A stretch of DNA of 64,000 bases from Octopus sinensis (GCF_006345805.1 NC_043002.1:66340001-66404000); one strand, 5' to 3'; counted from the first letter of the stretch, positions 1,914 through 41,107 are shown. Notes: generated by a model not told the origin, from the sequence alone. Made by a program: numbers and translations.

Positions 1914-1992
1914 CTTGGACAGTTTGTGGTAATCAATTAAATCTGGCCGGTGCCGATGAATCAGTGCACAGAAGGCCAAACCATCTTTAAAG
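1914..1992 (-). CDS. ACTN: Alpha-actinin CH2 exon, variant b (mutually exclusive candidate), 79 bp, phase 2 to phase 0
   Basis: tttgtctttctacag|C TTT AAA GAT GGT TTG GCC TTC TGT GCA CTG ATT CAT CGG CAC CGG CCA GAT TTA ATT GAT TAC CAC AAA CTG TCC AAG|gtgagt = (S)[26 protein letters not shown]. Same length and phases as 2645-2567, intact frame, many synonymous differences. Confidence 0.95.
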
Positions 1993-2020
1993 CTGTAGAA
2001 AGACAAAGAAACATACAATA

Positions 2021-2056
2021 CATGCATTTTGATGAGTTGCTCAACGGAGAGTTAGC
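2021..2056 (-). promoter_or_regulatory. Candidate branch point (GCTAAC, 2056-2051) and RBFOX motif (TGCATG, 2026-2021) upstream of exon variant b
   Basis: Consensus motif matches lying about 30-60 nt upstream of the 1993 acceptor on the gene's sense strand. Confidence 0.45.
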
Positions 2057-2566
2057 ATTCCTGAACAGACAGACACCAGATATTAAACAGATAGAGAAGA
2101 AATAAAAAAAGAGAGTGTCAGGTAGTAAGGATTTAGCACCGTCACCAAAAGAAGCAAGTTCTGGCAGTTTTTTTTTCTTCTTCAAGAAAAACTTGATATA
2201 TTATTTTCTCTATATGTGTAAGTAAACAACAAAACTAGTGAAATTTCATTTCACTTCTGGCGTTTCTTGCCAGTGATATGTCAGACTGAGATAAAAATCT
2301 GAGGAAGAAGAATGATAGAAGTTAAAAAAGTATAGAGAAAATAAATATCTTTTTATTTCTCTTAATTATCATTTTCTTAATTCTATAAACTGCCAAAACT
2401 TGCTCAGTTAGATAGTGTTTGTGTGAGCAGCATAAATAAAGCACTGGTCAGACAACAAATATAGATGGGTGGCAACAAGTTGGACAACGTGAGGGTGACA
2501 AAACGGAGTTTATTGTTATCAACTCAACAGTGATAACTGGCAGAGAACTCTTTTAGATTGATTTAC

Positions 2567-2645
2567 CCTGGTGAGTTTGTAATAATCCAGCAGTTCTGGA
2601 CGATGTCTGTGGATCAGGGCACAGAATGCCAGACCATCCTTCCAG
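2567..2645 (-). CDS. ACTN: Alpha-actinin CH2 exon, variant a (mutually exclusive candidate), 79 bp, phase 2 to phase 0
   Basis: attacag|C TGG AAG GAT GGT...ACC AGG|gtaaat = (S)[26 protein letters not shown]. Also visible inside supplied ORF 2519..2752. Upstream intron 8,391 bp. Confidence 0.96.
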
Positions 2646-4654
2646 CTGTAATATGACAAATATACATTTATGCAATATTTATAAAACAATTTATAACAAT
2701 AAAAAAAACCCACACAAGTGGATAACAATGGTATAAAGAGTTTCTGGTTCAAAGTATTAAAATGAAATTCTGTCTTAAAATAAATCCTTTTTTTTTTTTT
2801 TTTTTTTTTTGGCAGTCAATCACACCAATTGCAGTGCTTGACCCTGCAACGATGAAAGGCAAATTAACCTCGGCATCATTTGAACTCGGAATGTAAGAAG
2901 GTAAAAAGCCGGAAGAAATGCTACTAAGCATCTGGTCCAGCATGCTAAAGATTCTGCCAAAAAAAAAAAAAAAAAAAAAAAAGAAAAAAAAAACTGAATG
3001 ACATACACTTAAATATACATGCTTCTGTCTTGGTAAATTGATCAGAATTATAACAAAAGCTGGTCATGAAGGCTAAAGGTCATATTAACAACAATAGTAT
3101 AAGCAAAATAAACTATTACAGGAAGAATAAACTGGTTACTAAAATGTGAAAGAAGGACTAACATCATTAAAATGATGTATATATTTCATATACTTTCAAG
3201 TATCTACATATATATACCGTTGCTATTATGCAAAGGTGTCGTAAGTCCAAAACATTGCTTTTTCAGAAAACGAGAAAATAGTTTCACCATTCCATAGCAA
3301 AATCGTTGTACTACATACACTTTTACAATTTTTGATGTCTTGGCATCTGAAGCAGCTGGAGATACGATGGTTTGACTAAAAGAACCAGCTTTGCAAGCAA
3401 ATATGAATTTTGGAAAAAAAAAGATAAAAAAAGAGCATCTGGCCACATTTGGACATACGACAGTTTAACATAATAGTAATAAATACATATATATATATAT
3501 ATACATACATACACACACACACACCAAATGGATGTGTTATAAAACTATTCTGCATATACAATAACAGCCGTACCAACAATCCAACATACCTCTATCATCA
3601 GCTTCCCCATGGATATCACTATGGTTTCGACACCTGGGCAGTACCATTCAATCTGGCAGTGTCAACAGCACTAAAATAAGAGTTGTTTGGGACAAACATA
3701 CCTCAGATATCACCACATTCATTCAATCTTAATTCTATATATATATATATATATATATATGTGTATATATAAAATATGTATACCATTTGCAACTCACTGC
3801 ATCTATAGAGCAATCATTAATAAAAGGATTTAGAGAGGTTATAAGGAGCTGACCAGTGGAAAATACTAGTTTAAAGTAAAGTACACATGACAAGGCGTTA
3901 CTATATAGAATGTCATTAGAGCTTTAACTAAAATCATTAGGATCTGCATATATTTGGAGGAGCAGATATTTATTTTTCATTTTTGTGCGTTTCTTCAACA
4001 TCAATATTTCTGCACTTAAATGAGAAAACTGTTTATTTTATTTTATTTTTTTTAGAGCAATTATTTTCCCAGCAGGATGTTTTTCCTGTGGGGAACCATT
4101 CAGATGATAAGTGTGTGTGCGTGTGGTGGGGGGTATTTGAAATAAGAGACACAAGCAACATTCTTTTCTACAGTAGGCACAAGGCCTGAAATTTTTTTGG
4201 GGGACGGTGGGGCTCAGACAGTAAAGACAGATGAAATACTGCTAAGCATTTCGCCCAGTGTGCTAACATTTCTGCCTGCTCACTGCCTTAATAATATTTT
4301 CTACTCTAGGCACAAGGCCCAAAATTTTTGAGGAGGGGCCAGTCGATTAGATTGATCCTAGTACGTAACTGGTACTTAATTTATCGACCCTGAAAGGATG
4401 AAAGGCAAAGTCGACCTCAGTGGAATTTGAACTCAGAATGTAAAGACAAATGAAATACTGCAAAGCATTTTACCCAGTATGCTAACATTTCTGCCAGCCC
4501 GCCGCCTTTCGACACAAGCAACATTAACTGAGTAATGTAAGAGACTATGATGATAGATAGAATAGTCTCTGGTGTTAAAAAATGTTATATAATGAAAGCT
4601 ATAAGACCTTTCAAATAGGGCATATTTGGAGAAGATAAGTACAAATGGATCTAA

Positions 4655-5095
4655 TTCTTTTCTTTTATTTGTTTGTCATTCTGACTGTGGCCATGCTAGA
4701 GCAGTGCCTTCAGTGGAGCAAATCGACCCCAGGACTTATGGTTTGTAAGCCCAGTACTCTTTCTATCGGTATCTTTTGCCAAACCGCTAAGTTACGGGGA
4801 TATAAATACACTGGCATCGGTTGTCAAGTGATGTTGGAGGGATAAACACAGACACACAAACATATATACACACACACACATATATATACATATATATATA
4901 TATATATGACGGGCTTCTTTACATATATACGACGGGCTTCTTTCAGTTTCCCTCTACCAAATCCATTCACAAGGTTTTGGTCAGCCCGAGGCCATAGTAG
5001 AAGATACTTGCCCAAGGTGCCACAGAGTGGGACTGAACCTGGAACCATGTGGTTGGTAAGCAAGCTACTTACCACACAGCCACCCCTGTGCCTAA
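4655..5095 (-). mobile_element. SINE family A (head GGCTGTGTGGTAAG..., internal TA/TG microsatellite, tail type 1)
   Basis: Same module order at ~18955-19260 (-), ~30960-31190 (-, partial), ~34612-35020 (+) and ~55340-55672 (-). Shared strings include ggcaccttgggcaagt, ggaaactgaaagaagcccgtc, ccccgtaacttagc and ggggtcgatttgctc. Confidence 0.85.
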
Positions 5096-8000
5096 CGATA
5101 AATTTTAAAAAATACCAAAAGTAAAAAAACAAAAACAAAAAAAAACCCCTTGTCCAAAAGAATCATTTAAAAAATTTCAGCTGTGACTCAAGAATATCAG
5201 CCAGACTGTCAGATGGTATATAGCACTGGTCACAATGCACACCTTTGCATTGCTGTAGCTTTTAGAGGATGCCAACCGGTTGGCTAGGTGGGCAGGCCAT
5301 TGTTCCCCACCCCCACCACTAGAATGGAAAACCAGTCTGTTGCAGAGTTATCTGTTTACAGCTGACTGAACTGGAGCAACATAAAAATGAAGTGGTTTGC
5401 TCAATTCCTGATCTAGGAATTGAATCTATGATCTTCCAATCTTGGTCGGCTCTAACAGATTGACTTAACACCACATGACAAAGTTTGATGGACACATCCA
5501 TCTCATCAGATACTATATAAATATAGCTTCTGAATTTTTATGGTTTATATTAATCCTCATGAAATAATTTCATTGATTGCATCTCCTGGACCTTAGCTGC
5601 ATGGACACTCTACATTACATTTCTCTGTATTAGATCACTTTGTAGAGTGTTAGCCGAGTCTGCAAAAGGAGCTTTCTGTGATAGCCACAAAGTTTTCTGA
5701 TTCCATATATTATTTAAATTGTACCTGTAATAGAATAATCTTGTTCTATTCATGAGATAAGATTTACACTTTTCAGTACACAATATCGAAGACATTATTG
5801 TACGATGGTAAAGACCAGCTTTAATCTGCTTTACTTGAGCAGATGTATTGTACTCAATGTACTTTAAAGTGACTACATAATAGAATGCTACAAAGTGATC
5901 CATGTACTCAGTTCACCATATATGCATATGGTTAGCATTTAATTGAAGTTTATTTTGAATGTGTTAACTTAGGACTTCTTAAAAGAAAAACTTCTAGACA
6001 GTTTGGCTTGAAGAGACATGTTGCTATATTAGCAGGCTAAAGAATTAATAAGGAAGTTCTCTTAGTGGTTATGCATTCTGTCACCACTGTGAATGTTTTT
6101 AGAATATAGAAGTGTTATAAGCAGATAGAGATATTGTGAAGAAAACATGTTATCAGACTATCTCACTCAATAACACATTTTTGGAGAGTATGGACAAACC
6201 TGAAACATAAGTGGAATTTTAAAATACATTTAAATTTAAATTCAATAAACTTCAATTTTCTTCGCCAATATGTTATGATTAATTTTCTCTACAATTAAAA
6301 AAAAGGTATGTATGTAAATGTATAAAAATCAATAAATTGATTACTTCTAGCATAAAAATCTAACCTTATTCATATGGTATTTGGTCTACCAAATATCATG
6401 GTGAACCACTTTCTATGGCTACACACAAAAAAATATGTGTATTATTATAAAAAAGGTCAAAATTATATAATACAGATTTACTGATGCATGTTTTTAAACT
6501 GGAAAAATAGTAACTCTAAAAGTCCCTTATCTGCTTGAAATAAATCAAATTGTCTACAGTCAGATATCTTATTTACAAAGTATAAGAAAAATATATTTGA
6601 ACTTTGATATAAAACTATTAACCTGTGATACGATGATAAGACTATCTACATACAAGATCACAATATTTTAATATGTCATTCTGAGTCAATAAAAAATAGA
6701 ATTCTGTTTTCCGTAGTTATTCTAAGATGGTCAGGATATAGCTGAAATTATTTCAACGACTGAAGACAACAGTTATATTTATAACCTTCCAATCATATGT
6801 TTCTATGTTAATAGCCCTGCTTGTATCTCATTCACATTCTGTTCCATTCATAATTCCTATTTACTTAGGAATTCCTGTTATTTTGCACTTATCCTTTTAG
6901 TTTATTCTAAACACATTTTTTTTTATTCACTCCGGCTGTTTTTTTTTGTTTTTTTTTTTTACTTTTTTAAATTTCTTTTTAACCCTGAGGGGGGAATAAA
7001 ATCTTTACATCTTTGTTACTCCCTGATCCACCAAAGACCTTCACAGGAATAAGTATCCTAACCCACATCATCTGGCTTTAGCAGCACTGATAACAGGAGC
7101 AAAAGGAAATATATTGAATGTAAAGGGTTGGATAGGGTGGCAGAGCGGTGGTGGTGGGAAGAAATATACTCTGAAGTGTTTCATGGGGTTACAGGCTCAT
7201 CTCAATCCATGGTTTAAAACTCCTTCCCCTTTCCTTCCCCTCCCAGTAGTTGGAAAGAACCTAGTGAGCAGGAAAATGTACAAATTAAGCAGTGGGAAAA
7301 GTAAATGAGTAAGATCCCCTCTGAGTCATTTATTGGCTATAAAAGGAGCCTGAAGGAGAGGAGCAGGACGGGGATGAGGATGACAGAGAGAAGGAATAAA
7401 GATGCAGTGAAAGCAGTAACAGGCCTCCTCCAATGGAACAACGGCAGCAGCAGCAGCAATTACATTATTGACAGCCGATGTGTTATAGGAAAGCAGTGAC
7501 AGAAATTAAAAATAGCAAGACTGCAAATTACTTGCTTTTAGCAGTCTCACTAAAATATATATATGTGTGTGTGTGTGAGAGAGATGGGATAAGAGCAGCA
7601 GGTAGTAGAGGCCAACATTTGTAAGTAAAATTTTTGAAGCCCCTATGAAAGCAGAAGTAATTAAATGCTACAACAGGAACTTCCCTATCACAATACTTCC
7701 TGCTGAAGAAAATCATTGTAGTAACAAGTAAATAACAAGTGAATCTGGCTTCCTTTTAGCTGTTTTCTATCCAATACGATGTACACTAGTAATTGCAATG
7801 GGAACTCAAACTGTTTTTAGAGCATAATCAGAGCATCATCTCCAGAGTCTTAATTTGAAAGTGAAATAGTTTTGTAAAGATTTCACAATCTTTTATACAA
7901 TGATACTACTGTAAGTATATCTAGATATGTAACCAAAACTCTAAGACAAAATTTTGACTCAATGGAATATGATGGTTAAATCTGTAGAAATCCCAATTTT

Positions 8001-8640
8001 AATATATTTTAATAAAACTGTTGTCTTTATTTTCATTTTCAACACTATCTTTGCTCATGACCCTCATCATTTTCTACAGCACTCATTCGCTACAATTAGC
8101 TTCTGTGTCTACATCTTCAAACCTAAATTCACTTCTTTGTTACTTCCACCCACATGTCTCATTCTAGAGAGCAAATGAAAGTACTTTCAAATTTCTCCAT
8201 TTTATAACTTTCTACATTTCAAAGTTATGGAAATAATTTTCAAAGCTTTTTCAGTAACTTTCTCCATTTCCCTTTCATAAAGTTATTTCACTATTTATTT
8301 ATGTATTCCAATCTTACCAATAGATGTCAAAGAAAGTTATTTCGCTAATGTTTTCGTTTCCCTTTCATATTTCAATAACTTTTCAGCCAAGTTATTTTAC
8401 TATTTATTTATTTTGACCTTTCTTATAAAATATCACAAATTTAGGCATTAATTCGTTTAAAGTGTGGAATTTTAACCTGTTGCTTCAAACTTTTTATATC
8501 AAACCATTAAAAAAAAAGTATTTGGCTTATGTTTAGATTTACAGTTGCTTTCTAGAATTTCTCTAATGTGAGTGCATTCACAAAAACAGGAAGTCCTTTT
8601 GCATGTGAGTGTATGTGTGCATGCTTGTGTGTGTATGTAT

Positions 8641-8647
<7 letters not shown>

Positions 8648-8695
<48 letters not shown>

Positions 8696-8705
8696 TATAT
8701 ATATT
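8648..8705 (+). repeat. (TA)n microsatellite
   Basis: Long TA run. Comparable TA/CA/TG runs at ~3735, ~18140, ~20044-20113, ~23780, ~24310, ~39425, ~44320, ~51866 and ~61812. Confidence 0.95.
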
Positions 8706-9190: not shown

Positions 9191-10771
9191 TGATGTTTGC
9201 ATTTGTAATTACATTTTCGCTGTTAATAAATTGAATCAACAACATTATATATTTTCAGAAAGTCAATCGGTAAAGGATTAACTGCTTCCATTATTGAATA
9301 CACATTACATCCGTTATTTTCAGAGCTAATACAGCCACTACAAGACAGTAGTTTTCTACATAATTAATACATAAATACATTCATATAACACTGGAATGAG
9401 ACTCATTATTTTTGTTTTTAAAAAGGACTTTCCTGTTTTGTTTTTTGAATTAGGTTTGCAAGATTCCTGATGTGAAGTCATTATTAGTTTGATGATTCAG
9501 AAGGGTCATTATGCCAATAGTAAACACATGCATTGGTTTTATTTCACTTCTTTATTATTTGTTTGTCAGTTTGTTAACTATTGAACTAATTAACTAAGTG
9601 ATTGTTTGATTTATTGTTTGGTTAATCGATCAACCATTTAGGTTTGTCAAAGTCTGTTCACTGCTATTCGTGACTTCGTCATGATATATCCTCTCTACTC
9701 CAAATCAGCTTCGAAAACAATCAAAATTTTATTTCTGCAAATTCTGAATCTTACATTAGAAACACAAAAGAAATCAATGACTGCTTTTTTTGAAAAATAA
9801 GGCATAATAAAAAAAAAGTTAGAGGAGGTGGGGGTTAAAGAAGCCTTGCTTAAATGAATACCCAAACCATACCCTACTGTCTTAAGAAAGGACACTTTAA
9901 ACACTGAGGTCCTATAACTGGCACTTCATTGGTTACGTTGATGACGGTTCCAGTTGATTTGAACAATGGAACAAGCTGCTCATTAAATTAATGTGCAGAT
10001 ATGTGTACCCTTAATGTAGCTCTCAAGGAGATTCAGTGTGACACAGAATGAAGCTGGTCCTTTGAAACACTGGTGCTACTCATTTTTGCCAGCTGAATGG
10101 ACTGGAGCAACATAAAAAAGTATCTTGCTCAAGGACACAATGTTCCAACAGGAATTGAACTCACGACCTTACAGCCATACAACCCAAGAAGATATGATTA
10201 TATATTACATAAACTAGGAAAATACTACCTAGAGAGCAATGCTTTATGTACTACTAATAATAGTGTCACCAGCCCCTTAATAATTTAGCATGCAACCCAA
10301 TTGGATAATTGTACAAACTGATTAATTGATAGTTATTTGATTTTATTCCAAAAGACAATATCTAAGTTGATCTAGAACAGGACTTGAACCTCAGACTTAT
10401 GAACTCGCCACCAGTATATAAAACATCTGGTACTCTTACTCTCTCACCAAACTTTAGTGAAGAAGACTGCTATGTAATAATAAACTGAAAATTGAAAATC
10501 TATTCAACACAGACTGAAATGGTTGATTGTAGACAAGCATGTATATGATTACAATACAAACTAAGAAGGCTTGTTTACTTTAGTTCAATCAACAACTGAA
10601 TATCTATTATGTAACTGCTGTTTAACTGATCAGTACAACAGACATATAATTTATTGATTTGAAGCTGCACTGATAATTTATATGTGATTCATTCGGTTTT
10701 TTTTTTTCCTTCTCCCTACTTCTCCAGCAGAAAAATGTCTGCCAGTGGAGATGAGAGAGTAATTTCCACAG

Positions 10772-10863: not shown

Positions 10864-11035
10864 GATGATGTCAGCAATGATTTAGTCATAGGAATAAACA
10901 AAATATATTTACTGAAGGGTTACCAGCAATACTGACATTCATTAACTGAAATAGTGTCACCCAACTGGGACATTATCTTAATGAAGAAAATAATGAGGAT
11001 TGATAAACAGACTGATTAGCGGATTAATTTCCTTA

Positions 11036-11203
<168 letters not shown>

Positions 11204-15184: not shown

Positions 15185-15313
<129 letters not shown>

Positions 15314-18887: not shown

Positions 18888-21800
18888 TGTATTTCATGTT
18901 GTTTACATTTTGTGATGTCCTGTACCCATATATGCAGCATAAGTTTACCTTATATTCTTTGTAAGCCTAGTACTTATTCTATTGGTCTCTTTTGCTGAAC
19001 TGCTAAGTTACGGGGAACATAAACTCGCCAACATCGGTTGTCAAGCGATGGTAGGGCGACACACACAGACACAGAAATGCATGCACACACATATATACGA
19101 TGGGCTTCTTTCAGTTTCCATCTACCAAATCCACTGACAAGGCTTTGGTTGGCCTGAGGCTATAGAGGAAGACGCTTGTCCAATGTGCCATGCAATGGGA
19201 CTGAACCCAGAAGCACGTCGTTGGGAAGCAAGCTTCTTACCACACAGCCACACCTGCATCTCCACACAGCCAAGAGAGACAGAGAGTGTGTGTTTATGCA
19301 GTACATGATGATTGTTTTAAAAGGGCTTTAAATAAATTTGCCTAAAAGTTAATTTATAAAAATAAAACGAATACTTGTAATGTAATTCAAGTGAAAAGTT
19401 TTTCAGTGGATTTTACAGAGAAAATATTTATCTTCTTTTTTTCTCTTTGTGTTATTACTTTCAAGTACTGTTATGTGAAGCAATTGAACTATGATCCCTG
19501 CCGTTAAGTTCACATGCCTTCCAAATTTCTTTAGAAACAACTTGCTTGCTTTCTAATCTTAGAAAATAAACCAATCAACCAATTAACTTACTGCTTACTG
19601 TCCTATGACTATTCCATGAAGCTTTGCATGTGATCATTCAATCACCTATACTTTTACACAATTAAATAAGAATAACAAAAAATCTGAGTTGGGTGAATCA
19701 TTAAGAAATTTTCAGTTTGTCAGTCAAGCACTTAATGAATAAAGTTTACAGTTAGCAGTTGTTGATAATGATTAGAAAGCAACATAGTCATGGCAATGCT
19801 AAACACAGGAGGGTAGGTGACGGGGACCTAAATGACAGAGGGAAGAGAGAAACAATAACAGAACACCGTATTTTCCAGATGACAAGCAACTAAGAAAAGA
19901 GTAGATATTTCAATGATTATTAGGGTAAAACAGTAAAGCTTAAGTGATCATTTGACATGGCTGATTATTTCAATTATACTCTTGACTGAAGAGCCATTAG
20001 AGTTTACAGGAGAATTATACAAAAAAAAAAAATACATACTTAGACACACACACACACACACACACACACACCACACACACACACACAACACACACACACA
20101 CACACACACACACGGGGGTGTAAGTGCCTTCTACTAGAGTCCAGAGTCAAACAAAGCCTTGCTGAGTGGATTTGATAGACAGAAACTGAAAAATGCCCAT
20201 CTTGCGCCACTGCCATACAAGCCATGTTCTTCATTTCCAATCTTCCATGAAAACATGTCTGGATACGGAGAAATATTAACTTACTAAAGAAACAAACAAG
20301 GCTTGGTGACCATAAAAGCATCCAGAATAACCTTCCACTGTAAACTAAATATATTGTTTAATGTAATAGCTTTTGAAAATTTTGAAAATCTTTATTGTTT
20401 TAATGCTCACTTTTTCATGCTTGCATGGGTTGGATGGAGTCATTTGAAGCAGATTTTCTACTGTCAGATGCCTTTCCTGTTATCAAGCCCCCCACCTGTT
20501 TCCAAGCAAGGTAACATTTCCTCATGACTAGGTGTGTTTTCGCAGAACATAGGAAATGATACTGCTTGTATGACGGTAACACTCATTTACACCTATCATG
20601 CAATGTGAAGACAAGGAGCATCTCTCGGTTTCCTTCCACTAAATCCATTCACAAAGCTTTAGTAGTAGATGCTTAAGGAGTCACACAGTGGGACTGAACC
20701 TAAAACCATGTGGCTGGGAGCCAAGCTTCTTAACCACACAGCCACAGCCATGCCTTTCAAAATTGTACACAATCTACCAAATTATTTGGTCTTCAAACAT
20801 AAAACATGATTTATGCTCTTTATATTTCTGAATAAAAAATATAAACTAACATAAATTCTAGATTTATGTTGTTTCAAACGTGTGCATTAAAGCAAAATAT
20901 TGTATTCAATCTACTTAATATAAATGACTGAGAATTGCTTATCAAAAAAACTTTAGCTTTTGTGTCTATAACCCTGTAACAATATGATGCTTTTTTTTTA
21001 ATGGTGCTTATATTTTATATCATACAATGTATTATTGATTTACTAGAAGGTTAGCTCAAATCATGTAATTTTTGATAGCATTACAGTTACACGGAGTGTA
21101 TGCAGTCTGCGGTTGCAACGGAAATAACAAAAATAAATAGAAATCTTAACATTGTATTGCTATAAACTGGTAGAATCATTAGCACATCAGACAAATACGA
21201 TCGGCAGCATGCATTTCTTCCTGCTCTTTGCATCCTGAGTTCAAATACTGCCGAGGTCACCTTTGTCTTTCACCCTTGTAGGGTTCAATAAAGAATAAAA
21301 TAGAGAACCAGTGAAGTACCCAGTTTAATATAATTGGCTACACCCTCCCCTCAAAATTGTTGGCCCCTATGCCAGAATTAGAAACAATTATTCCTACCAT
21401 TAGTAAGGCAGTGAGCTGGCAGATTTGTTAGCATATCAGATAAAATGCTAGCAGCACAAATTTTTCTTCCAGTTCTTTACATACCAAGTTCAAATACTGC
21501 TGAGGTCAACTTGGCTTTCAAGCTTTGATAAAATAAAGTACCGAGACTGGTGCCAATGTAAATGACTAATCCCCTACCTAAAGTTACTGGCCTTGTGCCA
21601 AAATTTGAAACAATGTTTGTTTGGCTAGGGGTCAGTAATTTGCCTCATGGAAGCAAAGTGGCTGAGTTCCTTTCAAGTGTTGGACCCCATGGAGGCAATG
21701 ACCAAGACCTGCAATATTATGTCATGCTTGAGAAGAAAACCCATCAAGCCGAGCAAAAACACAGTCATGGCAGATACCAGTGTCATGCAAATGGCACCCA

Positions 21801-23767
21801 TGCCAGTGGCACATAAAAGCACCTATTACACCCTCGAGGTGGTTTGGCGTTAGGAAGGACATCCAGCCATAGAAAACCATACTAAATCAGACTGGAGCCT
21901 GGCACAGCCTTCCAGCATGCCAGCCCAGTCAAGCTGTCCAGCCCATGCCAGAATGGACAACGGACATTAAATAAGTTGTGCTAAAATACTGACTAGGGCT
22001 TATTAACTATTTCTATGATCAGGATTGTCAATTAAGATGTTTTGAATTTAACAGTGGTACATATGTATGTATTTATGTATCATCCTCATCGTTTTAATGT
22101 CCCCTTTTTCATGCTTGCATGGGTCAGTCTGAATTTGTTGAGACAGAATTTCTACAATCAGATGCCCTTCCTGTCACCAACCCTCATCTGTTTCCAGGCA
22201 AGGCAATATTCTCCCATGGCTAGACAGGCTTTCCACGGAAGACTAGAAACTAATAACCTCACTTGTATGACGGTGATGCTCATTTACAGCCATCATGTGA
22301 TGTCTAGACAAGGTTACACACACACACACATGCACATGACAGGCTTCTTTCAGTTTCCAAATTCATTCACATGGTTTTGGATGATCTGTGGTTTTAGTAG
22401 AAAATGCTTGTTCAAGTTGTTGAAAAAGACCAGAAGCTTGGTTCCCAACCATGGGTTCAATCCCACTGCATGGCACCTTGGGCAAGTATCTTCAACTAAA
22501 GCCCTGGGCCAGCCAAAGCTTTCTGAATGAATTTGGTACATGGAAAGAAAGTGAAAGAAGCCTGTCAAAAATATTTATATCTATCAATCTCTCTCTATAT
22601 GTGTGTCTTGTGCATAAAAGCGGTCAAAATATATACACTTTTATGAAAGTTCACTTTCATAAAACAAATTAATACTCCTGCAGTAAGTAAACTTGCTGCG
22701 TAAAATATGCTGCCCCCACCCAAAGCAACTTGATGCAATCAGAAGCAAGGGGGCCATGTACAGACTGCATAGTTCAATTAGTTGGACAATAAGATAAAAG
22801 ATTAAAAGAAAAAACCCATAAGTTTATGATTTCCTCAGAAATTACAGTTGTTCTGATAAAACTTGTATGACTCATAATTGCAACAAATTATTTCATTCCA
22901 TACTGTAATTTATTTTTCGCTTTCTACATTTTCTATGTAATATAATTTAGACCCTAACCAAGAGGACTTCATTAAAAAGACATAAGCCATCACCCCTGCC
23001 CTACATACAAACAAGAGAGGAAAGGCTGCAACAGACATCTATAGTAAAAAAAAAAAAATAAATAAATAAAATAACAACCACAACAACAAAACTGGATGTA
23101 ATGAATGAGGACGATAAGGATGCAAAGGAAAAAAGCAAAGAGAAGGCAGAGTGATTAACTGAGAGGGAGGAAATGGATAATGATATAAGTATTAGCTGTA
23201 GGATGTCAGGAGCTTTTGACAGTAAAATGTCAGAATAGGATAAAGCAAGTTCAAATCCAGTTTGCAAATGAAATTTCGCTTCAGCTAACAATTAATGAAT
23301 GGGAGGTTGTAGTGGTGTGACTTATAAAACTGATACAGTTCTAGATTCCGACTATCACATTCAATATATACATACATACACATGCATATAATGTAGTCGC
23401 AGATATTACAAAAAAAACACCAATAGCATGGCCATGAGCGGAATATCTTTGATCATAGGTTTGCTCAATTAGGGCTGAACAGGAGCTAAATACCAACAAC
23501 CCCATAAGAAAATGTTTGGATCATACAAAGATAATATGGTAAAAGAGTATAGCAGAACACACACACCTGCGCGCACAGCACAGAAAGTATGATAAATACA
23601 AGATGCAGTTTATATCCTTTGTTCCTAATGTATTCTTCACCATTGTGGATGTTGCTCTGTATATCATAATCAGTAATACTACTAACTACAATAGTAACCA
23701 CACTGTTATACTGGATGTAAACTAGATGATGATATTTTACATGGAGCTCTAAACTCACAACTATACA

Positions 23768-24338: not shown

Positions 24339-27300
24339 AAGCTGCAATGAAGTTTAAAAATTAGAACGAAAGGTGAATATTTGTTTCTCATACACTAGTG
24401 AATGAGAAGACCTTGACTTTGCTCAGTAACAAATCTCTCTATTCAGCCCTAAACATGACTATCTGTAGAGATAGAAAAGACATGCAGACTGATAAGTACA
24501 TCAAACAGACTGGTTTAATCATCTGTGGATTAAAATCTAGCTAAGTGCACTTACAACTGTTGACAATAATCCCTTAAAGTAGGTGAGCATCTGCTTATGC
24601 CTAAAATGTTTTATATTTGTGAGGGAAAAGAAGAGCTGTGCATACAAGTTATTGATCAGCCAGACTGTCAAGACAGACCTTAACTAAATAGCCACTGACC
24701 AATACCGTGATAACAAGGGACTCTACATCAACCATATTCCACTGAATCACACTCTTCCGTCTTAAGAAAAGGCAAAAAAGATGCTGCTCTGTGTAGTCCT
24801 AGACATCATTATCATCATTTTGTCTGTTTTCCATGTTGGCATGAGTTGGATGGTTAAATAGGAGCTGGAAAACCAGAGGACTGTGCCAAGCTCTACTGCT
24901 TTGGCACAGTTTATATGACTGGACACCTTTCCTAAAGCCAACCACTTTATAGAGTGTAGTGGGTGCTTTTTATTGGCACCCACCAGCACTGATGAAAGGA
25001 TGGGTAAAAGTGGAATATCTTTGACCATAGGTATGCTCAATCAGAGATGGAGAAGAACTAAACTACAGCAACAATCAAATAAGAGAATGTTCAGATCATA
25101 CTACGATAATATAGCAAAATACGTCCATCATCATCGTTACCAACCAACCTTTCTAAATCGAGATTAGATAGTCTGATGTAATGGGTTCGAGGATTGTATT
25201 TTATTCCAATGGCTGCTTTGGCATAGTTTCTACTGCTTGATACCCTTCCTAATGCCCACCTCTTTACAGGCGTGTGCTGGGAGCCTTTTTCATGGCACCA
25301 GCACTAGTGATGTCACCATGCTGCTTGCAACACTAAAATCTCCTTCAAATGAGTGAAGCTACAAAAGAGGAACGTGGCTTTATGACAAGGGATGAACGGG
25401 TTAATAATGAAAGATGGCATTTTGGCTATTTCTGTAACCCTGTCCAGTATTGCTAGACAATAAGGTAACATGTACCTCGCTATCCTAGATTTTTGATAGG
25501 TCTTTGAGATTTTAGCAACCCTATTCATCAAGATAGTTGAGTGGATGTAATCACAGACATACACTTACTTATATGCTTTTTACTCTTTCTCTTGGTGGTA
25601 CATATATTTCTTCTAAACTACAAAGCTATCGTAATTTAGCAATCCTTTTGTATCTCAAAATAATTACTTCTTTCACAATAAAATGGCATGTATTACACAC
25701 ACACAGAGTTACTTTTGACATATATTGAAGACATTCTTTATTACTTCCTCCTTCACAAACTGTTTTCTTTATTCCTTGTAAGAAATTAAAGTTTAACCTG
25801 CCTAAACAAATGCTAGTGTTTGTACCTCAATGAAATACTGAAATAATACACACAGACACACGCGTATATATATAAAGATATAGATATGTGCAGCAGTCAT
25901 GCTTTTTCTAAAAAATTATGCTTGCCATATTTACTTATAGCACAGCTACAACCAAACTTTTTGACCAATTAAGTCATTCTCTCTTCTTTTAATGGTATTC
26001 TTATCAATATTATTCAACAATTCAAACCAATTCTTATCCAATTGCCCATAGTATAAATGTGTATTTTTCCATGTAAACAACATAAAATATGAATGATGAC
26101 ATACACATTTATGTTTTAACATTGCAGCAAGTTCAACAACTTCTTTGAGATGAACGTGTGTTCACAACACACTTGATTCATTAGGGTAAGGGAACTTTGG
26201 GGCACCTGGTGTTTCGAACTTGTTGTGTCTCCTCAGTTAATGCCACACTGGACTAATTAATCTAACAAGAGTTTAACATAAAATAACTTAAACAATATTG
26301 TCACAGTTCCTTCCAATAGCAACAAAATGAACAATCTGTTTGCCAGAAGGGATGATAACAGAAGCAGGAACTGTGGAAGGATAAAAATTATTTATGCAAA
26401 GTGTACAGTTTAGATATTTTTACTGGATAACATTTTAGGATTTTTACAACATTCATGAGCAATGTAATTTTGATTCCTAGCTGAAGTTGTTGCATCTCAC
26501 TTAGGCCATAATGACCGTGAGAAAAAGAATTGATTTCAAAATTCTATTATCTTTATTTGCCAGAAGTCAATAAGACTAATTGTTTAATAATGAATACATA
26601 TGCTAATCAGAAAAAAAGAAAAAGACAGTTTAGTAATCAACATCACTCATAATTGCTGAGCAAAAAGTGCTGTGTAAGAATGATTCCATGGTGATGTGGC
26701 TCCATTTTGGTCAATACTGTCTGTTATGAAGAAACCATGTATGGAACTTATGTCACTCAGTTAAGTAACCATTGCAATTTTGCAATCAGTTTACAGAGTT
26801 ACATAATGCTTATTATAATATCAACAATGTTATTTGCTGTAGATGATATCTTTATAGCAACCAAAAGGCTACGTCAAGATCAGACAGAAAAACAAAAAAA
26901 TTATGCTAATGGCAGAACCCAATCAATGCAATGCCATTGGGAAACATATTTCTAGTCAAGGAAGAAGATAATTACCAACAGGGATATATATTAATCCGAT
27001 TTGTTCTGGTTGGCTGCAGATATCTTATTGATTATTATTAATTTCACATGTTTTTAATAATGCACACATGATAATTAATGGGGAAAAAATGACTGCTTAT
27101 GAGACCAGATTAAAAAAAGGAAGTCATAATTTATTTAAAATATGTCCAAAGCATAAATATGAATAAGCATTCAGTTTTTCATTCAGTACAGCCTTATTTT
27201 CAAGCTTAGGTTACACTGCTGGATAGAGATGACTGCCACCATATTTTACGTAATGGACACTGCTGTTCAGACACAGCATGTTAGAACATGTTATGAAGCA

Positions 27301-30300
27301 TTGCCAATAGAGACATCAACAGCAGCAACCTAAATCTAACTGTATAACTCAATACTTAATACTCTAGAAGGATACTTTATATGTTGCTGCACAATCTCAT
27401 AGTCTTCCTCTCAAATTCTCCAATAACATACGGTACTAACAAATGTACAATTTCCATAAGACACATTTGAACTACAAGCACTTATCATGCAATGGAATCT
27501 AACTACCATACCTCCACTTTTCACTAAAAATACTTTGAGTCCCTACAGCATCAACTAAAATGCCTTGTAGTATGTTCTGGTTCCCCTGCATTCTGAGTTC
27601 AAATCCCACCAAGGTCAGCTTTGTCTTTCATCCTTTCATTACCATCATTTGATGCCTGTTTTCGATGCTGGTGTGGATTGGATGGTTTGACAGGAGCTGG
27701 CAAGCCAGAGAGCTGCACCAGGTTCCAATTGTTTTATTTTGGCATGGTTTCTATGGCTGGATGCCCTTCCTAATGCCAACCACTTTACAGAGTGTACTGG
27801 GTGCGTTTTATGTGGCTAATAAAAAGAAATAAAACATCAGTCTAGGTTGGCAGACAGATAGAACTGTAAGAACATAGGACTACTAATTTAGCACTCTTTG
27901 TTCCAGCTCTTTGCATTCAGAGTTCAAATCCTATCACGGCTTTACTTGGGTAGTAAACTTAAACTTTCACAGAGAGAAAGAGAGGTGGGGAGAAGGCATA
28001 CTCAAGGAAAAAGTAGTAAAACCTGAGATCTGTTCCTGATCAAACTGCTATAACTGAAACTATGATGAAACATCAAGTACATGACAAACTTAACAATAAA
28101 AGACAGCAAAATGAGATAAAGGAGGAAATGAATTCAATGGGGAAGATATTTCAACTAGATTAAACAAAACAGATTAATTCAAGGAGGAAGCAGGTTATGG
28201 CAAGTACTTTAAGTGACTTCAGGTAATTCTCTCTCTCTCTAATATGATGATACAATTTGAATGCAAACTTTTACAAAAAAAGACTGACAAATCAAGTCTC
28301 AAATTAAATGACAATGCTTGTTCTTGTTGCTAGGTGTGTTGTGATGTATAGGCTAGTTGATCAAAAATTGTTTTGATGTTTGCTCAATCATAAACAGAGA
28401 AGTATATGAAAGAAGCAAAGTACAAATGAGACGAACAGGTGCTTGGGCATTCAAAATGAAAAAAAAAGGGAAGAAAGAAAAGCACTTGCTGATTGATGGT
28501 AGGTAAGAAGTTAGAATGGTAATGACAGACATGTAATGCACATAGTCAACAACTTCTAATCACCACCTTCACAACAACCAGTATTATTATGATCAACATT
28601 AGTATCATCATTGTTGGTTTGCAGTCTACTTTTTTCAAGCTTGCATGTGAATGGGTCAGACAGAATTTACTGAGGCAGATTTTCTACAGCCAGATGCCCT
28701 TCCTGTCACCAACCCTTACTTGTTTCTGAGCAAGGTAATGTTACCCCATAGCCTTTCAGAAGATGAGAAGTGAACATCACTGCTTATATGATAGTGATGC
28801 TTGTTTACAACAATCACACAATGTTGTGACAAAGAGACACAAAAACACACTCATTCCCCATTTAGCCAAGGGCCCACAAGAAAAGGCATTTGCCCATGGT
28901 GCCATAGAGTGGGGCTAAATCTGAAACAATGTTCTTGGGAAGTGAACTCCTTAGGGAGCTAAAAGTAAAGTGTGTTGAGAGGTCAAGATGATGAAAAATA
29001 CAAGAGGAGTAGAGTCTGAGAATGTTAGTCCTCAGAATAATGATCACTGGATTGTGAAGAATAATGGTACACTCATTTAACTCATAACAGTAATAAGAAA
29101 GAATGATGGTGATGATATGTAAAAACTTACATGAAGACATTTAAGTTATCACACTGGGTATCAAAATAAATGTTTCTTCTGTTAGGTTTATTAAAATTGA
29201 AATTTATATATTTCATGATATTGACAAAACCTTGTAGCTTGTTGGATCCTGTCAAACCATCCAACACATGCCAGCAGATAAAACAGACATTAAATAATGG
29301 TGGTGATAGTATTTGTATTTAATGTATGTTTAAGCTTGGCATACGATTAATATTTCAAGTTCTAAACTATGTTTCACCTCTTTGTTTCCCTAGAAGACAC
29401 AAGCAACCTTTTTTGAGAAGCAGGCTGAATGAGACACTGCTTATAATGAAGCAGGTCGTAATACTAAAAAAAATTTAAGGTAATTTTTCATTAGGCATAC
29501 CATTCAGAAAGTCCCATGGGCCACAGTTCTCTTATGACTGCTCTGAAGGAACGTAAAGCCTATTAACTTTACAGCACAGCTCTTAATTGGTGATAGTCAT
29601 TAACATTTTGTAGTACTAAAATTCCAAAATCCTTTTCTAATATCCTAAAATAGATCAGTCTGCTACTCAACAGAAATTAAATCGTTTCAATATTACTATT
29701 GAGGAAACTCCATTATTGTTAGGTGTACTATATGACCATTTAATTAACATGGGTTAGTTTACTCTTTCCATCAACAAAATTGAGAAAATCAGCATTAGCA
29801 ATATAGTGAGAATTCATTTGGCTTATTGCCTACATTGGAAAAAAATCTTAATCATAGTCTACAGAAATTATTATCACTAGATTAAGCTTAGTCAGAGGAA
29901 TTAATACAATTTCTGAAAAACTGCCATACAAAGATTAAGATTAAGAATACAGGCACAAACATGACAGTGTGGTTGGTTGACTCACTTCCCAATCACATAG
30001 TTTTGTGAGAGTCTTATGTAACAAGGGGATTTGGTAAATGGAAACTGAAAGAAACCTGTCCTATGTGTGTGCAACACCTTGTGTTGGCATTACATAATAG
30101 CTGTAAATGTACATTGCCATCATACAAGCAATGACAATTTTCAATCTTCCATGAAAATGTGTTCAGGTCTGAGAAAATATAACTTTGCTTGGAAACAGGT
30201 GAGAGTTGGTGTATGGGCATCTGGCCATAGAAAACTTGCCTCAATGAATTTCCATCAAAGCACAGAAAAAAATGGGTGTTGATGATGATTACGAGGATTG

Positions 30301-30843
30301 TTCTGGAATGAAATGGTGCACCTGTGTTAAACAGAGCTTGAATATTTATCTTCTCACATGTAACTCTGAGGATCTGGCCTCAACTCTACAAAGTTTAGCT
30401 AAGAATTCATCAATTATATTTAGTCTCCATATCTCACAGAGAGATGAAGTATGCCTCTCCATAGAATCTAGTTACAGACAAAGCTTAAGATAACAAAATA
30501 AATAAATAAAGATCTTTACAAAAAGATCACATCAGTAACACTTCAGTTGCTAGGTCAGAATCCTAAAAATCCTCATGCAACAGACACCTTTATGATAATG
30601 ATAACTTAAAGGAACATAATAATGGTTTGAAAATTTGGCACAAAGCCAGCAGTTTTAGGGGAGGGGGCAAATTGATTACACAGACTCTAGGGTTTGGTTG
30701 GTATTTATTTTATCACCATTGAAAGGATGTAAAGCATTGCCAACCTTGATGGAATTTGAACTCAGCAAGCAAAGAGCCAGAAGTAATAAGTCACTAAGCA
30801 TTTTGTCCTACATGCCAACAATTCAGTCAGCTTACCTTTCAAG

Positions 30844-31651
30844 CAGTGGTGGCTCGTAGATGAAATTAGTGGAGGGTGCTGCTTCAGAAAATTTTTAGTT
30901 GTTGTTTTAATATTTTTTTATTCTGTTGTTTTTATTCAGAATAAACATTGGTTGCCAAGAGATGGTGGGGGGTGGGGACAAACACAGACAACCATATACA
31001 CACATATGCATATATATATATATGTATACGACGAGCTTCTTTCAGTTTCCCTTTACCAAATCCACTCACAAGGCTTTGGTCGGCCCGAAGCTATAGTAGA
31101 AGACACTTGCCCAAGGTGCCATGCAGTAGGACTGAACCTGGAACCATGCGGTTGGTAAGCAAGCTACTTACCACACAGCTGCACCTGTGTAAATATTTTT
31201 CAAATCCTGGCAGCTACACTGAAGCTGGAAGCAGGATAATAATCTAATTGTACAATTTATCATATTCAAGATTATAAACACATTTTTAAGCACAACATAC
31301 GTGGGGTCAAAAAGAAACACTGCCTTTCACCAGAACACCAGGGTCAGCAATGTGTTAACCACAGTGCTCTCTCTCCCTAGCGTGCAGCTTCCTATCTTGG
31401 ATATGTGAGCATGCACACAACAGCCAAACACTGCATCACTGGAACTGTGAAGTGCACAATTCTATATAAGGATTTTTGAATTTTCTTCATAAACCAGGGT
31501 ATGGCTACTGTTATTAAGCTGAAGGATTATATAATGTACAAGTATAAAGAATTAAAGTAAAAAAGGTCTCATTATATTGAATGTTATCAATAATATCAAG
31601 TGAAATAGAGGGTGCTGCAGTTCCGCAGTACCTATACACAAGCCGCCACTG
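30844..31651. mobile_element. hAT-type non-autonomous element, 808 bp, 8-bp TSD
   Basis: TIR CAGTGGTGGCTCGT vs CAGTGGCGGCTTGT (12/14). TSD CTTTCAAG at 30836-30843 and 31652-31659. Subterminal GAGGGTGCTGC near both ends. Contains a nested family A SINE. Confidence 0.85.
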
Positions 31652-40872: not shown

Positions 40873-41107
40873 CTTCGGCACCAATGGAAACCAGCCTGAC
40901 ACCTTTGCTGGCAATGTAGTCCAAGGCTTTATTGACGTTGGCTATTTTGTGGAATCTCATCTTGCCTCTGTCTGGCTTGGGTAGTTGTTCACCAGATATA
41001 ACTTCCAAAAGCAACATAAGCTTTAATCCATTCCGAAAATCTTCTTCAATATCTTCTATCTGCGTTCCTGCTTTTCTTAGATGAGAATTACACCAGGCAG
41101 TAAACGT
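40873..41107 (-). CDS. ACTN: Alpha-actinin coding exon (CH1 domain), 235 bp, phase 0 to phase 1
   Basis: Reverse complement reads cag|ACG TTT ACT GCC TGG...GGT GCC GAA G|gtaggt = [78 protein letters not shown], the characteristic alpha-actinin CH1 sequence. AG at 41109-41108, GT at 40872-40871, polypyrimidine tract upstream. Confidence 0.98.

What the first reader, a model, noticed from the sequence alone, without database searches (positions are those of the whole stretch)
1914..2645. Tandemly duplicated, mutually exclusive CH2 exon in alpha-actinin (vertebrate exon-6 equivalent)
Seen: two 79-bp exons 574 bp apart with identical phases (2/0) and canonical splice sites, encoding (S)[26 protein letters not shown] and (S)[26 protein letters not shown]. 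The DNA has diverged mostly at synonymous sites while the protein is preserved, implying both are under selection. Joining a to b reads AGG|CTT TAA (stop at the second codon), and skipping both shifts the frame, so only one-of-two splicing is productive. The 574-bp spacer is too long for steric exclusion, so regulation plus NMD is implied. Known: the described alternative cassettes in alpha-actinins are the exon-8 (end of CH2) and exon-19 (EF-hand) equivalents; I know of no report for this exon. From memory, variant b resembles the Drosophila sequence (SFKDG...PDLIDYAKLSK) and variant a resembles vertebrate ones (SWKDG...PEL). The W/F switch sits at the end of the reported PIP2-binding peptide TAPYxNVNxQNFHLSWK. 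Inference: a tissue-specific (muscle vs neural/non-muscle) switch tuning the actin-binding domain.
Basis: partly seen in the sequence, partly recalled or inferred. Interest (0 to 1): 0.9.

Follow-up and report, generated by a model that had tools for sequence, protein, structure and literature searches.

The report
Ancient either-or exon pair in alpha-actinin
The octopus alpha-actinin gene really does carry two alternative copies of one small exon, used one at a time; the pair predates the split of molluscs, brachiopods and annelids and is already in automatic gene annotations, so it is a solid but only moderately new finding.

Summary
Observation confirmed. On the minus strand the window holds alpha-actinin exons. 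When spliced, they reproduce residues 34-196 of Octopus vulgaris/O. sinensis isoform X1 (with exon 6a, 2645-2567) or O. sinensis isoform X2 (with exon 6b, 1992-1914).

Both exons are 79 nt, in the same phase, with AG/GT splice sites, 574 nt apart. Synonymous sites between them are saturated (pS 0.82) while pN is 0.12. Joining a to b gives CTT TAA.

The pair is not cephalopod-specific. The same a-then-b tandem lies in the genomes of Lottia, a chiton, Lingula and two annelids. A mayfly has one copy. RefSeq lists X1/X2 isoforms differing only in this exon for octopuses, many bivalves, gastropods and Lingula.

New here:
- UGCAUG sits 32-34 nt upstream of exon 6b in octopus, limpet, chiton and brachiopod.
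- Exon 6a always has the weaker 5' splice site and 6b a consensus one.

Best model, inferred: 6b is the default exon. An Rbfox-type factor represses it, so 6a is used in muscle and neurons. NMD removes double inclusion and double skipping.

I found no paper describing this exon pair, but Lek et al. 2010 could not be read. It is a new member of a known kind, of moderate interest.

The parts
2567..2645 (-). Exon 6a (upstream copy): 79 nt, phase 2 to 0, encodes (S)[26 protein letters not shown]. The 5' splice site is weak (AGG|gtaaat, 7/9 matches to consensus) and the polypyrimidine tract is poor.
   Evidence: Used in O. vulgaris/O. sinensis/O. bimaculoides isoform X1 and in all cephalopod transcript assemblies seen. 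The peptide is 25-26/26 identical in Lottia, Liolophura and Lingula.
1914..1992 (-). Exon 6b (downstream copy): 79 nt, same phases, encodes (S)[26 protein letters not shown]. The 5' splice site is consensus (AAG|gtgagt, 9/9) and the polypyrimidine tract is better.
   Evidence: Used in isoform X2 of O. bimaculoides, O. sinensis and Argonauta hians. The peptide is identical in Lottia, although 14 of 79 nucleotides differ, all synonymously.
2021..2026 (-). UGCAUG (Rbfox-type element) 34 nt upstream of the exon 6b acceptor, between the likely branch-point region and the polypyrimidine tract.
   Evidence: The same hexamer lies at -32 (Lottia), -34 (Liolophura) and -33 (Lingula); Owenia has GCAUG at -40. 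It is the only non-splice-site hexamer shared in register by 4 or more of 6 species in an unbiased scan of four 120-nt flanks.
1993..2566 (-). Intron of 574 nt between the two alternative exons (GT...AG, U2-type).
   Evidence: The equivalent intron is 533 nt in Lottia, 556 in Liolophura, 931 in Lingula, 303 in Capitella and 1109 in Owenia.
11037..11124 (-). Constitutive upstream exon (vertebrate exon-5 equivalent, 88 nt), encoding (E)[28 protein letters not shown] and ending AG| in phase 2. It is the donor for either 6a or 6b.
15193..15279 (-). Constitutive exon (87 nt), encoding [28 protein letters not shown] (end of CH1).
40873..41107 (-). Constitutive exon (235 nt), encoding [10 protein letters not shown]...SIGAE (CH1). 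It equals vertebrate exons 2+3 fused.
   Evidence: Pfam CH domain, E 2.5e-39.

Best explanation
SHOWN
- This is the 5' part of the single alpha-actinin gene of an octopus (Octopus vulgaris or O. sinensis; the gene spans about 150 kb).
- The 79-nt exon that encodes the second helix and following loop of the CH2 domain exists as two tandem copies, 6a then 6b.
- Mature mRNAs carry exactly one copy. The two proteins differ at six residues: W/F, E/D, L/I, Y/H, T/S and R/K.
- The duplication is ancient. The same a-then-b arrangement occurs in a gastropod, a chiton, a brachiopod and two annelids. Both copies are under strong purifying selection.
- Including both exons gives a stop at the second codon of 6b. 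Skipping both shifts the frame.

INFERRED MECHANISM
- Exon 6b has consensus splice signals and is the default choice.
- A UGCAUG element about 33 nt upstream of its acceptor lets an Rbfox-type protein block branch-point/U2AF recognition of 6b in Rbfox-expressing tissues, expected to be muscle and neurons.
- The weak exon 6a is then spliced instead.
- Nonsense-mediated decay removes the rare double-inclusion and double-skipping products.
- The conserved R (AGG|) versus K (AAG|) last codon is at least partly a splice-site-strength difference.

INFERRED FUNCTION
- The two CH2 variants tune the actin-binding domain, either its stability or closed/open balance, or the neighbouring PIP2 platform.
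- This gives one gene a muscle/neuronal form and a general form.
For: Gene identity and exon model.

One-of-two usage. Each of these isoform pairs differs only inside this exon:
- O. bimaculoides X1/X2: 6 residues.
- Ostrea edulis X1/X2: 4 residues.
- Sinanodonta: 6 residues.
- Gigantopelta X4/X3: 5 residues.
Both exon types also occur among the annotated isoforms of O. sinensis, Mizuhopecten, Pecten, Argopecten, Mytilus californianus, Mercenaria, Dreissena, Mya, Ruditapes and Lingula X1-X4; for these only the exon-6 peptide was read, not the whole proteins compared.

Independent transcript assemblies (Logan):
- 6a type: P0260, P0261, P0381 (57 contigs).
- 6b type in bivalves: P0302 (13 contigs), P0419, P0406, P0439-P0443.

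Genomic tandem pairs found by tblastn: Lingula L001, Liolophura L002, Capitella L003, Owenia L004, Lottia L007. The mayfly Cloeon L006 has a single exon.

Selection: pS 0.82 versus pN 0.12 and a simulation P of about 1e-5. The 6a peptide is 25-26/26 identical across four classes or phyla at only 60-65/79 nucleotide identity. Octopus and Lottia 6b encode identical peptides with 14 synonymous differences.

Frame logic in six species.

UGCAUG at -32 to -34 in 4 of 6 species, the sole shared non-splice-site hexamer.

Conserved 5' splice-site asymmetry, 6-7/9 for 6a versus 8-9/9 for 6b in all six species.

Precedent: Fox-1 represses exons through (U)GCAUG in the upstream intron, including the NM exon of the vertebrate alpha-actinin NM/SM pair (PMC2777236).
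Against: - No RNA-seq junction counts or tissue data could be examined, so the tissue pattern and the direction of the switch are untested.
- In cephalopods, 6b use rests only on RefSeq/DDBJ gene models. Exact look-ups of hypothetical 6b versions of six cephalopod transcript-assembly proteins found none.
- Capitella lacks the upstream UGCAUG and Owenia has only GCAUG at -40.
- Lingula also has UGCAUG at +122 and +243 downstream of 6b, which by the usual position rule would enhance 6b.
- The polypyrimidine-tract asymmetry is not consistent in the annelids.
- The annelid copies resemble each other more than the mollusc copies do (23-24/26). Gene conversion or an independent duplication in annelids is therefore not fully excluded.
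- No functional difference between the W and F forms has been measured. Three of the six changes are conservative.
Confidence: 0.72

Rival explanations
1. One of the two copies, most plausibly 6b in cephalopods, is a decaying or unused pseudo-exon, and the X2 isoforms are annotation artefacts.
For: No cephalopod transcript-assembly protein with 6b was found, whereas 6a versions are abundant.
Against: - 6b keeps an open frame, consensus splice sites and a peptide identical to that of Lottia, despite 14 synonymous nucleotide differences.
- It is intact in six genomes.
- 6b-type full-length transcripts exist in several bivalve assemblies.
- The neutral-decay simulation gives P of about 1e-5.
Confidence: 0.03
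2. The exon choice is enforced mainly by competing RNA secondary structures (a docking site and selector sequences in the introns), as in arthropod Dscam1, 14-3-3 zeta or Mhc clusters, rather than by a trans-acting repressor.
For: Many invertebrate clusters of mutually exclusive exons use this mechanism (established knowledge; PMC6071210 is listed).
Against: - Best intron-intron duplex energies between the three flanking intron segments are not better than dinucleotide shuffles in any of six species (z from +0.6 to -1.8).
- No conserved intronic hexamer other than UGCAUG was found.
- The inverted-repeat search found only TA/CA microsatellites.
- The duplex test is crude and could miss a short conserved stem.
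Confidence: 0.1
3. Mutual exclusivity is steric: the branch point of exon 6b lies far upstream, close to the 6a donor, as in alpha-tropomyosin exons 2/3 and the vertebrate actinin SM exon.
For: Distant branch points are documented for tropomyosin and actinin pairs of mutually exclusive exons (PMC7969005).
Against: - The AG-free zone upstream of the 6b acceptor is only 49 nt in octopus and 19-40 nt in the other species. There are branch-point-like CTCAT and CTAAC motifs within about 60 nt, so a distant branch point is unlikely.
- There is no long polypyrimidine tract across the 574-nt intron.
Confidence: 0.05
4. The pairs arose more than once, for example independently in annelids and in the mollusc+brachiopod lineage, so the feature is recurrent rather than a single event of about 550 Myr ago.
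For: - Annelid copies both start with F and are 23-24/26 identical to each other, against 20-22/26 in molluscs and the brachiopod.
- Owenia carries further duplicated exons, so the locus is duplication-prone there.
Against: - The order is the same, with an R-ending weak-donor copy first and a K-ending consensus-donor copy second, in all six species.
- Owenia 6a has the YYKLSR signature. Owenia 6b is 25/26 identical to octopus 6b but 20-21/26 to the 6a exons of molluscs and the brachiopod.
Confidence: 0.15

Closest known systems
Vertebrate ACTN1/ACTN4 exon 19a/19b (NM/SM) mutually exclusive pair
   Same: - Same gene family, and a tandem-duplicated exon pair used one at a time.
- Fox-1 represses one member through upstream (U)GCAUG (PMC2777236).
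- It produces tissue-specific actinin isoforms from one gene (PMC4550062).
   Different: - It lies in the first EF-hand and switches Ca2+ sensitivity; it is not in CH2.
- It is reported to have arisen in chordates (PMC4550062), whereas this pair is lophotrochozoan.
- There the repressed exon is the upstream one and a distant branch point contributes. Here the UGCAUG precedes the downstream exon.
ACTN2/ACTN4 exon 8a/8b and the Drosophila Actn ABD/neck alternative exons
   Same: - Alternative homologous exons within the actin-binding domain of alpha-actinin.
- They give muscle and non-muscle forms in Drosophila (PMC4550062).
- The event is old, shared between human and fly (PMC8373072).
   Different: - It affects the end of CH2 and the neck (the ...[11 protein letters not shown]...HAF... 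exon), two exons downstream of this one.
- That event co-exists with single or duplicated exon 6. Cloeon has two copies of it but one exon 6; Owenia has both duplications.
C. elegans egl-15 exon 5A/5B and vertebrate FGFR2 IIIb/IIIc
   Same: A two-exon mutually exclusive pair whose tissue-specific choice depends on Fox-family binding to UGCAUG in the intron next to the regulated exon (PMC2777236, names them; the details are from my own knowledge).
   Different: These are unrelated receptor genes. Regulation there has been shown experimentally; here it is only inferred from motif conservation.
C. elegans atn-1 exons 4a/4b
   Same: Mutually exclusive homologous exons in an invertebrate alpha-actinin, verified experimentally (PMC4165533).
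   Different: The exons are 161 and 83 nt, not 79/79. The size suggests the exon-8 equivalent. I could not map them, so the relation to this pair is unresolved.

Membership tests
alpha-actinin (CH1-CH2 actin-binding domain, spectrin repeats, EF-hands) | Two calponin-homology domains at the N-terminus, with sequence orthology to alpha-actinins | tested here: met
   Pfam CH domain at E 2.5e-39, two stretches. The spliced window exons equal residues 34-196 of O. vulgaris/O. sinensis alpha-actinin. The best PDB matches are actinin, ACTN2, ACTN1, ACTN3 and ACTN4 at E 1e-59 to 1e-69.
alpha-actinin (CH1-CH2 actin-binding domain, spectrin repeats, EF-hands) | Spectrin-repeat rod and C-terminal EF-hands in the same gene | tested here: met
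   These parts are not in the window, but the full-length octopus protein that the window exons match carries PF00435, EF-hand families and PF08726.
Tandem-duplicated mutually exclusive exons | Adjacent homologous exons of equal length and phase, each with its own canonical splice sites | tested here: met
   79/79 nt, phase 2 to 0, AG/GT sites, 72% nucleotide and 77% amino-acid identity.
Tandem-duplicated mutually exclusive exons | Mature transcripts contain exactly one of the two | tested here: met
   Four X1/X2-type isoform pairs (octopus, two bivalves, one gastropod) were compared over their full length and differ only in this exon. Both exon types are also annotated in further bivalves, O. 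sinensis and Lingula, where only the exon-6 peptide was read. Full-length Logan transcripts of each type exist in bivalves. For octopus 6b there are only gene models and no raw junction reads.
Tandem-duplicated mutually exclusive exons | Inclusion of both or neither destroys the reading frame | tested here: met
   Double inclusion gives a stop at codon 2 of 6b in 5 of 6 species and after about 20 codons in Capitella. Skipping both gives early stops.
Tandem-duplicated mutually exclusive exons | Both copies conserved in related species | tested here: met
   Six genomes from three phyla keep both copies intact and in the same order.
Rbfox-regulated alternative exon | (U)GCAUG in the intron flanking the regulated exon, conserved across species | tested here: met
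   TGCATG at -34, -32, -34 and -33 in Octopus, Lottia, Liolophura and Lingula; GCATG at -40 in Owenia; absent in Capitella.
Rbfox-regulated alternative exon | Binding by an Rbfox protein and a change of exon choice when the site or the protein is removed | not testable with these tools
   This needs CLIP, a minigene or a knock-down.
Rbfox-regulated alternative exon | Exon usage correlates with Rbfox-expressing tissues (muscle, neurons) | not testable with these tools
   The transcript assemblies carry no tissue labels. The dominance of 6a in cephalopod assemblies is only suggestive.
RNA-structure-controlled exon cluster (docking/selector type) | Conserved complementary intronic sequences competing for one docking site | tested here: not met
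   Duplex energies are no better than shuffles in six species, and no other conserved intronic hexamer was found. The test is crude.

The most novel reading that the evidence does not exclude
Lophotrochozoans have kept a switch in the CH2 domain of their only alpha-actinin gene since before molluscs, brachiopods and annelids diverged (by general dating more than 500 Myr ago). It has not been described in the literature.
- It is gated by an Rbfox-type factor acting through a UGCAUG about 33 nt upstream of the second exon.
- One exon (6a) is frozen at 25-26 of 26 residues.
- It would be the invertebrate counterpart of the vertebrate split into muscle and non-muscle actinin genes.
- The conserved last-codon R/K difference would be held by splice-site strength rather than by protein function.
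Probability: 0.45. Interest if true: 0.55.

Novelty: new member of a known kind. Interest (0 to 1): 0.42.

Why it matters
Alpha-actinin is the main actin cross-linker of Z-discs, dense bodies and adhesions. Vertebrates diversified it by gene duplication plus two known alternative exon pairs. This would be a third, independent pair, placed next to the PIP2-binding platform of CH2, in a large animal clade that has a single actinin gene.

- It offers a natural experiment on how small changes in CH2 tune actin binding: W/F at a conserved aromatic position, plus a five-residue loop signature.
- The UGCAUG is held within 3 nt of the same position in four distant lineages (cephalopod, gastropod, chiton, brachiopod). 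That makes it an unusually clean case of deep conservation of a splicing-regulatory site.
- Practically, the pair causes annotation errors. Several mollusc gene models fuse both exons.

Tried and rejected
1. The first homology search with the 163-aa fragment returned only proteins of 286 aa or less and nothing closer than 93%. The tool appears to limit target length to about 1.75 times the query. Padding the query with X lifted this limit.
2. The representative search gave only vertebrate full-length representatives and was of no use for isoforms.
3. No genomic DNA could be fetched for other cephalopods. The gene spans 118-150 kb and no DNA is returned for such long ranges, in O. vulgaris, O. 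sinensis and Argonauta. Within-cephalopod intron conservation could therefore not be tested.
4. Lingula X1, Tubulanus X2 and Folsomia X1 are not on record as gene products. The Tetranychus look-up returned a transcript, not a genome.
5. Exact look-up of hypothetical 6b versions of six cephalopod transcript proteins found none.
6. The metagenome scan returned only metatranscriptome-like actinin contigs, none from cephalopods.
7. The inverted-repeat search was swamped by TA/CA microsatellites. The duplex-energy test for selector/docking pairing was negative.
8. Exon 1 and exon 7 were searched for and are not in the window.
9. Seven literature searches found no description of this exon pair. Lek et al. 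2010 (PMC4125621), the one paper most likely to mention it, is not held.
10. I recalled a possible ACTN1 disease mutation at position 25 of this exon. It is not in the table I could check, so I dropped it.

Full report
**What is in the window.** tblastn with a vertebrate alpha-actinin places five coding segments on the minus strand, at 41.1 kb, 15.2 kb, 11.1 kb, 2.6 kb and 1.9 kb. Reading the sequence gives these exon borders: 41107-40873 (235 nt), 15279-15193 (87 nt), 11124-11037 (88 nt), 2645-2567 (79 nt, exon 6a) and 1992-1914 (79 nt, exon 6b). All have AG acceptors and GT donors.

Spliced with 6a, the exons translate to exactly residues 34-196 of alpha-actinin isoform X1 of Octopus vulgaris (CAI9724319.1), which is the same protein as O. 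sinensis XP_029637553.1. Spliced with 6b, they give residues 34-196 of O. sinensis isoform X2, XP_029637554.1. The gene spans about 150 kb in both assemblies. Exon 1 and exon 7 lie outside the window. The sizes 87/88/79 nt match what I remember of vertebrate exons 4/5/6, so 'exon-6 equivalent' is a fair label.

**The observation.**
- The copies differ at 22 of 78 coding positions, 14 of them third positions.
- By Nei-Gojobori counting that is 14.5 synonymous and 7.5 non-synonymous differences, giving pS 0.82 (saturated) and pN 0.12.
- If 22 substitutions fell at random, 6 or fewer amino-acid changes without a stop would occur about once in 100,000 trials.
- Joining 6a to 6b reads AGG CTT TAA. 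Since 79 is not divisible by 3, skipping both exons also breaks the frame.

**Both exons are used, one at a time.** The first homology search was blind to full-length proteins. Padding the query with X fixed that.
- O. bimaculoides isoforms X1 and X2 are 888 aa each and differ only at residues 171, 187, 189, 192, 195 and 196, which are exactly the six a/b differences.
- O. sinensis X2 and Argonauta hians X2 carry 6b.
- Full-length comparison shows the same kind of pair, differing only inside this exon, in Ostrea edulis, Sinanodonta and Gigantopelta.
- Both exon types are also annotated in Mizuhopecten, Pecten, Argopecten, Mytilus, Mercenaria, Dreissena, Mya, Ruditapes and Haliotis species, and in the brachiopod Lingula anatina (X1/X3 carry a, X2/X4 carry b). 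For these I read only the exon-6 peptide.
- Independent transcript assemblies (Logan) hold full-length proteins of the a type, including cephalopods (one sequence on 57 contigs), and of the b type in bivalves (for example one on 13 contigs).
- For cephalopods I found no assembled b-type transcript, even by exact look-up of six hypothetical b versions. Use of octopus 6b therefore rests on gene models plus the conservation evidence below.

**Age.** tblastn on fetched genomic loci shows the same tandem, W/R-type first and F/K-type second, between the exon-5 and exon-7 equivalents.

| Species | Locus | First copy (a) | Second copy (b) |
|---|---|---|---|
| Lottia gigantea | L007 | 24500-24578 | 25112-25190 |
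| Liolophura sinensis (chiton) | L002 | 30809-30887 | 31444-31522 |
| Lingula anatina | L001 | 22554-22632 | 23564-23642 |
| Capitella teleta (annelid) | L003 | 7044-7122 | 7426-7504 |
| Owenia fusiformis (annelid) | L004 | 33659-33737 | 34847-34925 |

- The chiton is annotated with one isoform only, yet its b exon is intact.
- The mayfly Cloeon dipterum has a single exon 6 flanked by introns of about 50 nt.
- The 6a peptide is 25-26/26 identical among octopus, limpet, chiton and brachiopod, while the DNA is only 60-65/79 identical.
- Octopus and Lottia 6b encode the same peptide with 14 synonymous differences. The mayfly exon encodes that peptide too.
- The duplication therefore predates the mollusc-brachiopod split. 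Given the shared order, the shared R/K ending and Owenia's YYKLSR/PDLIDYSKLSK signatures, it most likely predates the split from annelids as well.
- The annelid copies are more alike than the mollusc ones, so gene conversion or a separate origin there is not excluded.

**How the choice is probably made.** The intron between the copies is 303-1109 nt in all species. The AG-free zone before 6b is short, 49 nt in octopus, so steric exclusion through a distant branch point is unlikely. Both introns are ordinary GT-AG. A test for unusual intron-intron complementarity was negative in all six species.

Two conserved features stand out.
1. TGCATG lies at -34 (octopus, window 2026-2021), -32 (Lottia), -34 (chiton) and -33 (Lingula) from the 6b acceptor. 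Owenia has GCATG at -40 and Capitella has none. The surrounding intron sequence is otherwise unalignable. In an unbiased scan of all hexamers in four 120-nt flanks, this is the only non-splice-site word shared in register by four or more species. The background frequency is 0.25-0.57 per kb, so three further hits within a 7-nt window are very unlikely by chance (my estimate is below 1e-5).
2. The 6a donor is always sub-optimal ((A/C)GG|GTAA[A/C] or GTAGG, 6-7/9 matches). The 6b donor is always near-consensus (AAG|GT[A/G]AG, 8-9/9). The conserved R versus K at the last residue is thus also a -2 G versus A difference in the donor.

Fox-family proteins repress an exon when bound to (U)GCAUG in the upstream intron. 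They do this at the NM exon of the vertebrate alpha-actinin NM/SM pair (PMC2777236).

My model is that 6b is the default exon. An Rbfox-type protein blocks it in muscle and neurons, and weak 6a is then used. NMD clears the frame-broken by-products. The dominance of 6a in cephalopod transcript assemblies fits this, but only weakly. These steps are inferred, not shown.

**What the protein difference may do.** The exon encodes the second CH2 helix and the following loop.
- R192 of the ACTN2 PIP2 platform (R163/R169/R192) lies in the invariant HRHR.
- The W/F residue is the penultimate residue of the mapped PIP2 peptide 165-181 (PMC4259493; the numbering is my own count).
- The other five differences cluster 4-13 residues after R192.
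- A tuning of domain stability, CH1-CH2 opening or PIP2/neck regulation is plausible but untested.

**Comparison with what is known.** Described alternative exon pairs in actinins are these:
- The EF-hand exon 19a/b, which arose in chordates (PMC4550062).
- The exon-8 pair, shared by ACTN2/ACTN4 and Drosophila (PMC8373072).
- C. elegans atn-1 exons 4a/4b, 161 and 83 nt, probably the exon-8 equivalent (PMC4165533).

The exon-8 duplication is visible in my Cloeon and Owenia loci and is separate from the exon-6 pair. Seven full-text searches found no description of an exon-6 pair. The most relevant paper, Lek et al. 2010, is not held. The isoforms themselves are in RefSeq for well over a dozen species.

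**Verdict.** The feature is real, strongly conserved and functional. It is a further tandem-duplicated pair of mutually exclusive exons in a gene family already known for them. It is present in automatic annotation and apparently not discussed in print. The additions from this work are the dating to the lophotrochozoan stem, the positionally conserved UGCAUG and the conserved splice-site asymmetry. Interest is moderate (0.42), not 0.9.

Noticed in passing
L004 (Owenia fusiformis) 28896-29110, 33188-33268, 37755-38552: The Owenia actinin gene has further tandem exon copies. There are two copies of the exon-5 equivalent, a third exon-6-like copy with an in-frame stop (SFQDGLAFTALINIH*PELLDYDKLKK), and two copies of the exon-8 equivalent.
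   Followed up: no
L006 (Cloeon dipterum) 10570-10656 and 10935-11021: There are two homologous copies of the exon-8 equivalent ([29 protein letters not shown] and [29 protein letters not shown]). This is the known insect alternative exon pair at the end of the actin-binding domain. Exon 6 is single here.
   Followed up: partly
Proteins P0257 (Tegillarca granosa), P0258 (Nucella lapillus), P0389 (Mytilus coruscus), P0404 (Mya arenaria): Deposited gene models fuse both exon-6 copies into one coding sequence by translating or trimming the spacer. These are annotation errors caused by the exon pair.
   Followed up: partly
Protein P0256 (Tubulanus polymorphus isoform X2): This nemertean model repeats almost the whole actin-binding domain twice in one 912-aa protein. 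It is either a local assembly or annotation artefact, or a real segmental duplication. The gene locus was not on record.
   Followed up: no
window 53060-53327; 60070-60485; 20044-20113; 3470-3790, 4860-4910, 8630-8700: The window contains several repeat arrays: an AG-rich low-complexity array that explains the GC-skew spike at 52-54 kb, a 213-bp unit repeated twice, (AC)36, and TA/CA microsatellites inside the 8.4-kb intron upstream of exon 6a. No tRNA genes and no ORF of note were found.
   Followed up: no
exon-6 peptides across arthropods: Arthropods with a single exon 6 split by lineage. Pterygote insects, a decapod, a centipede and two springtails (Allacma, Orchesella) have the F/b-like form. 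Chelicerates, the springtail Folsomia and copepod-like sequences have W. Whether this reflects differential loss of an older pair or simple substitution is open.
   Followed up: no
L001 (Lingula) +122 and +243 downstream of exon 6b, and -210 upstream: Lingula has extra UGCAUG copies around exon 6b. The downstream ones would, by the usual position rule, enhance rather than repress 6b, so regulation in Lingula may be more complex.
   Followed up: no
tool behaviour: the search for homologous proteins returned no target longer than about 1.75 times the query length. Padding a fragment query with X to about 570-590 aa retrieved the full-length orthologues.
   Followed up: yes
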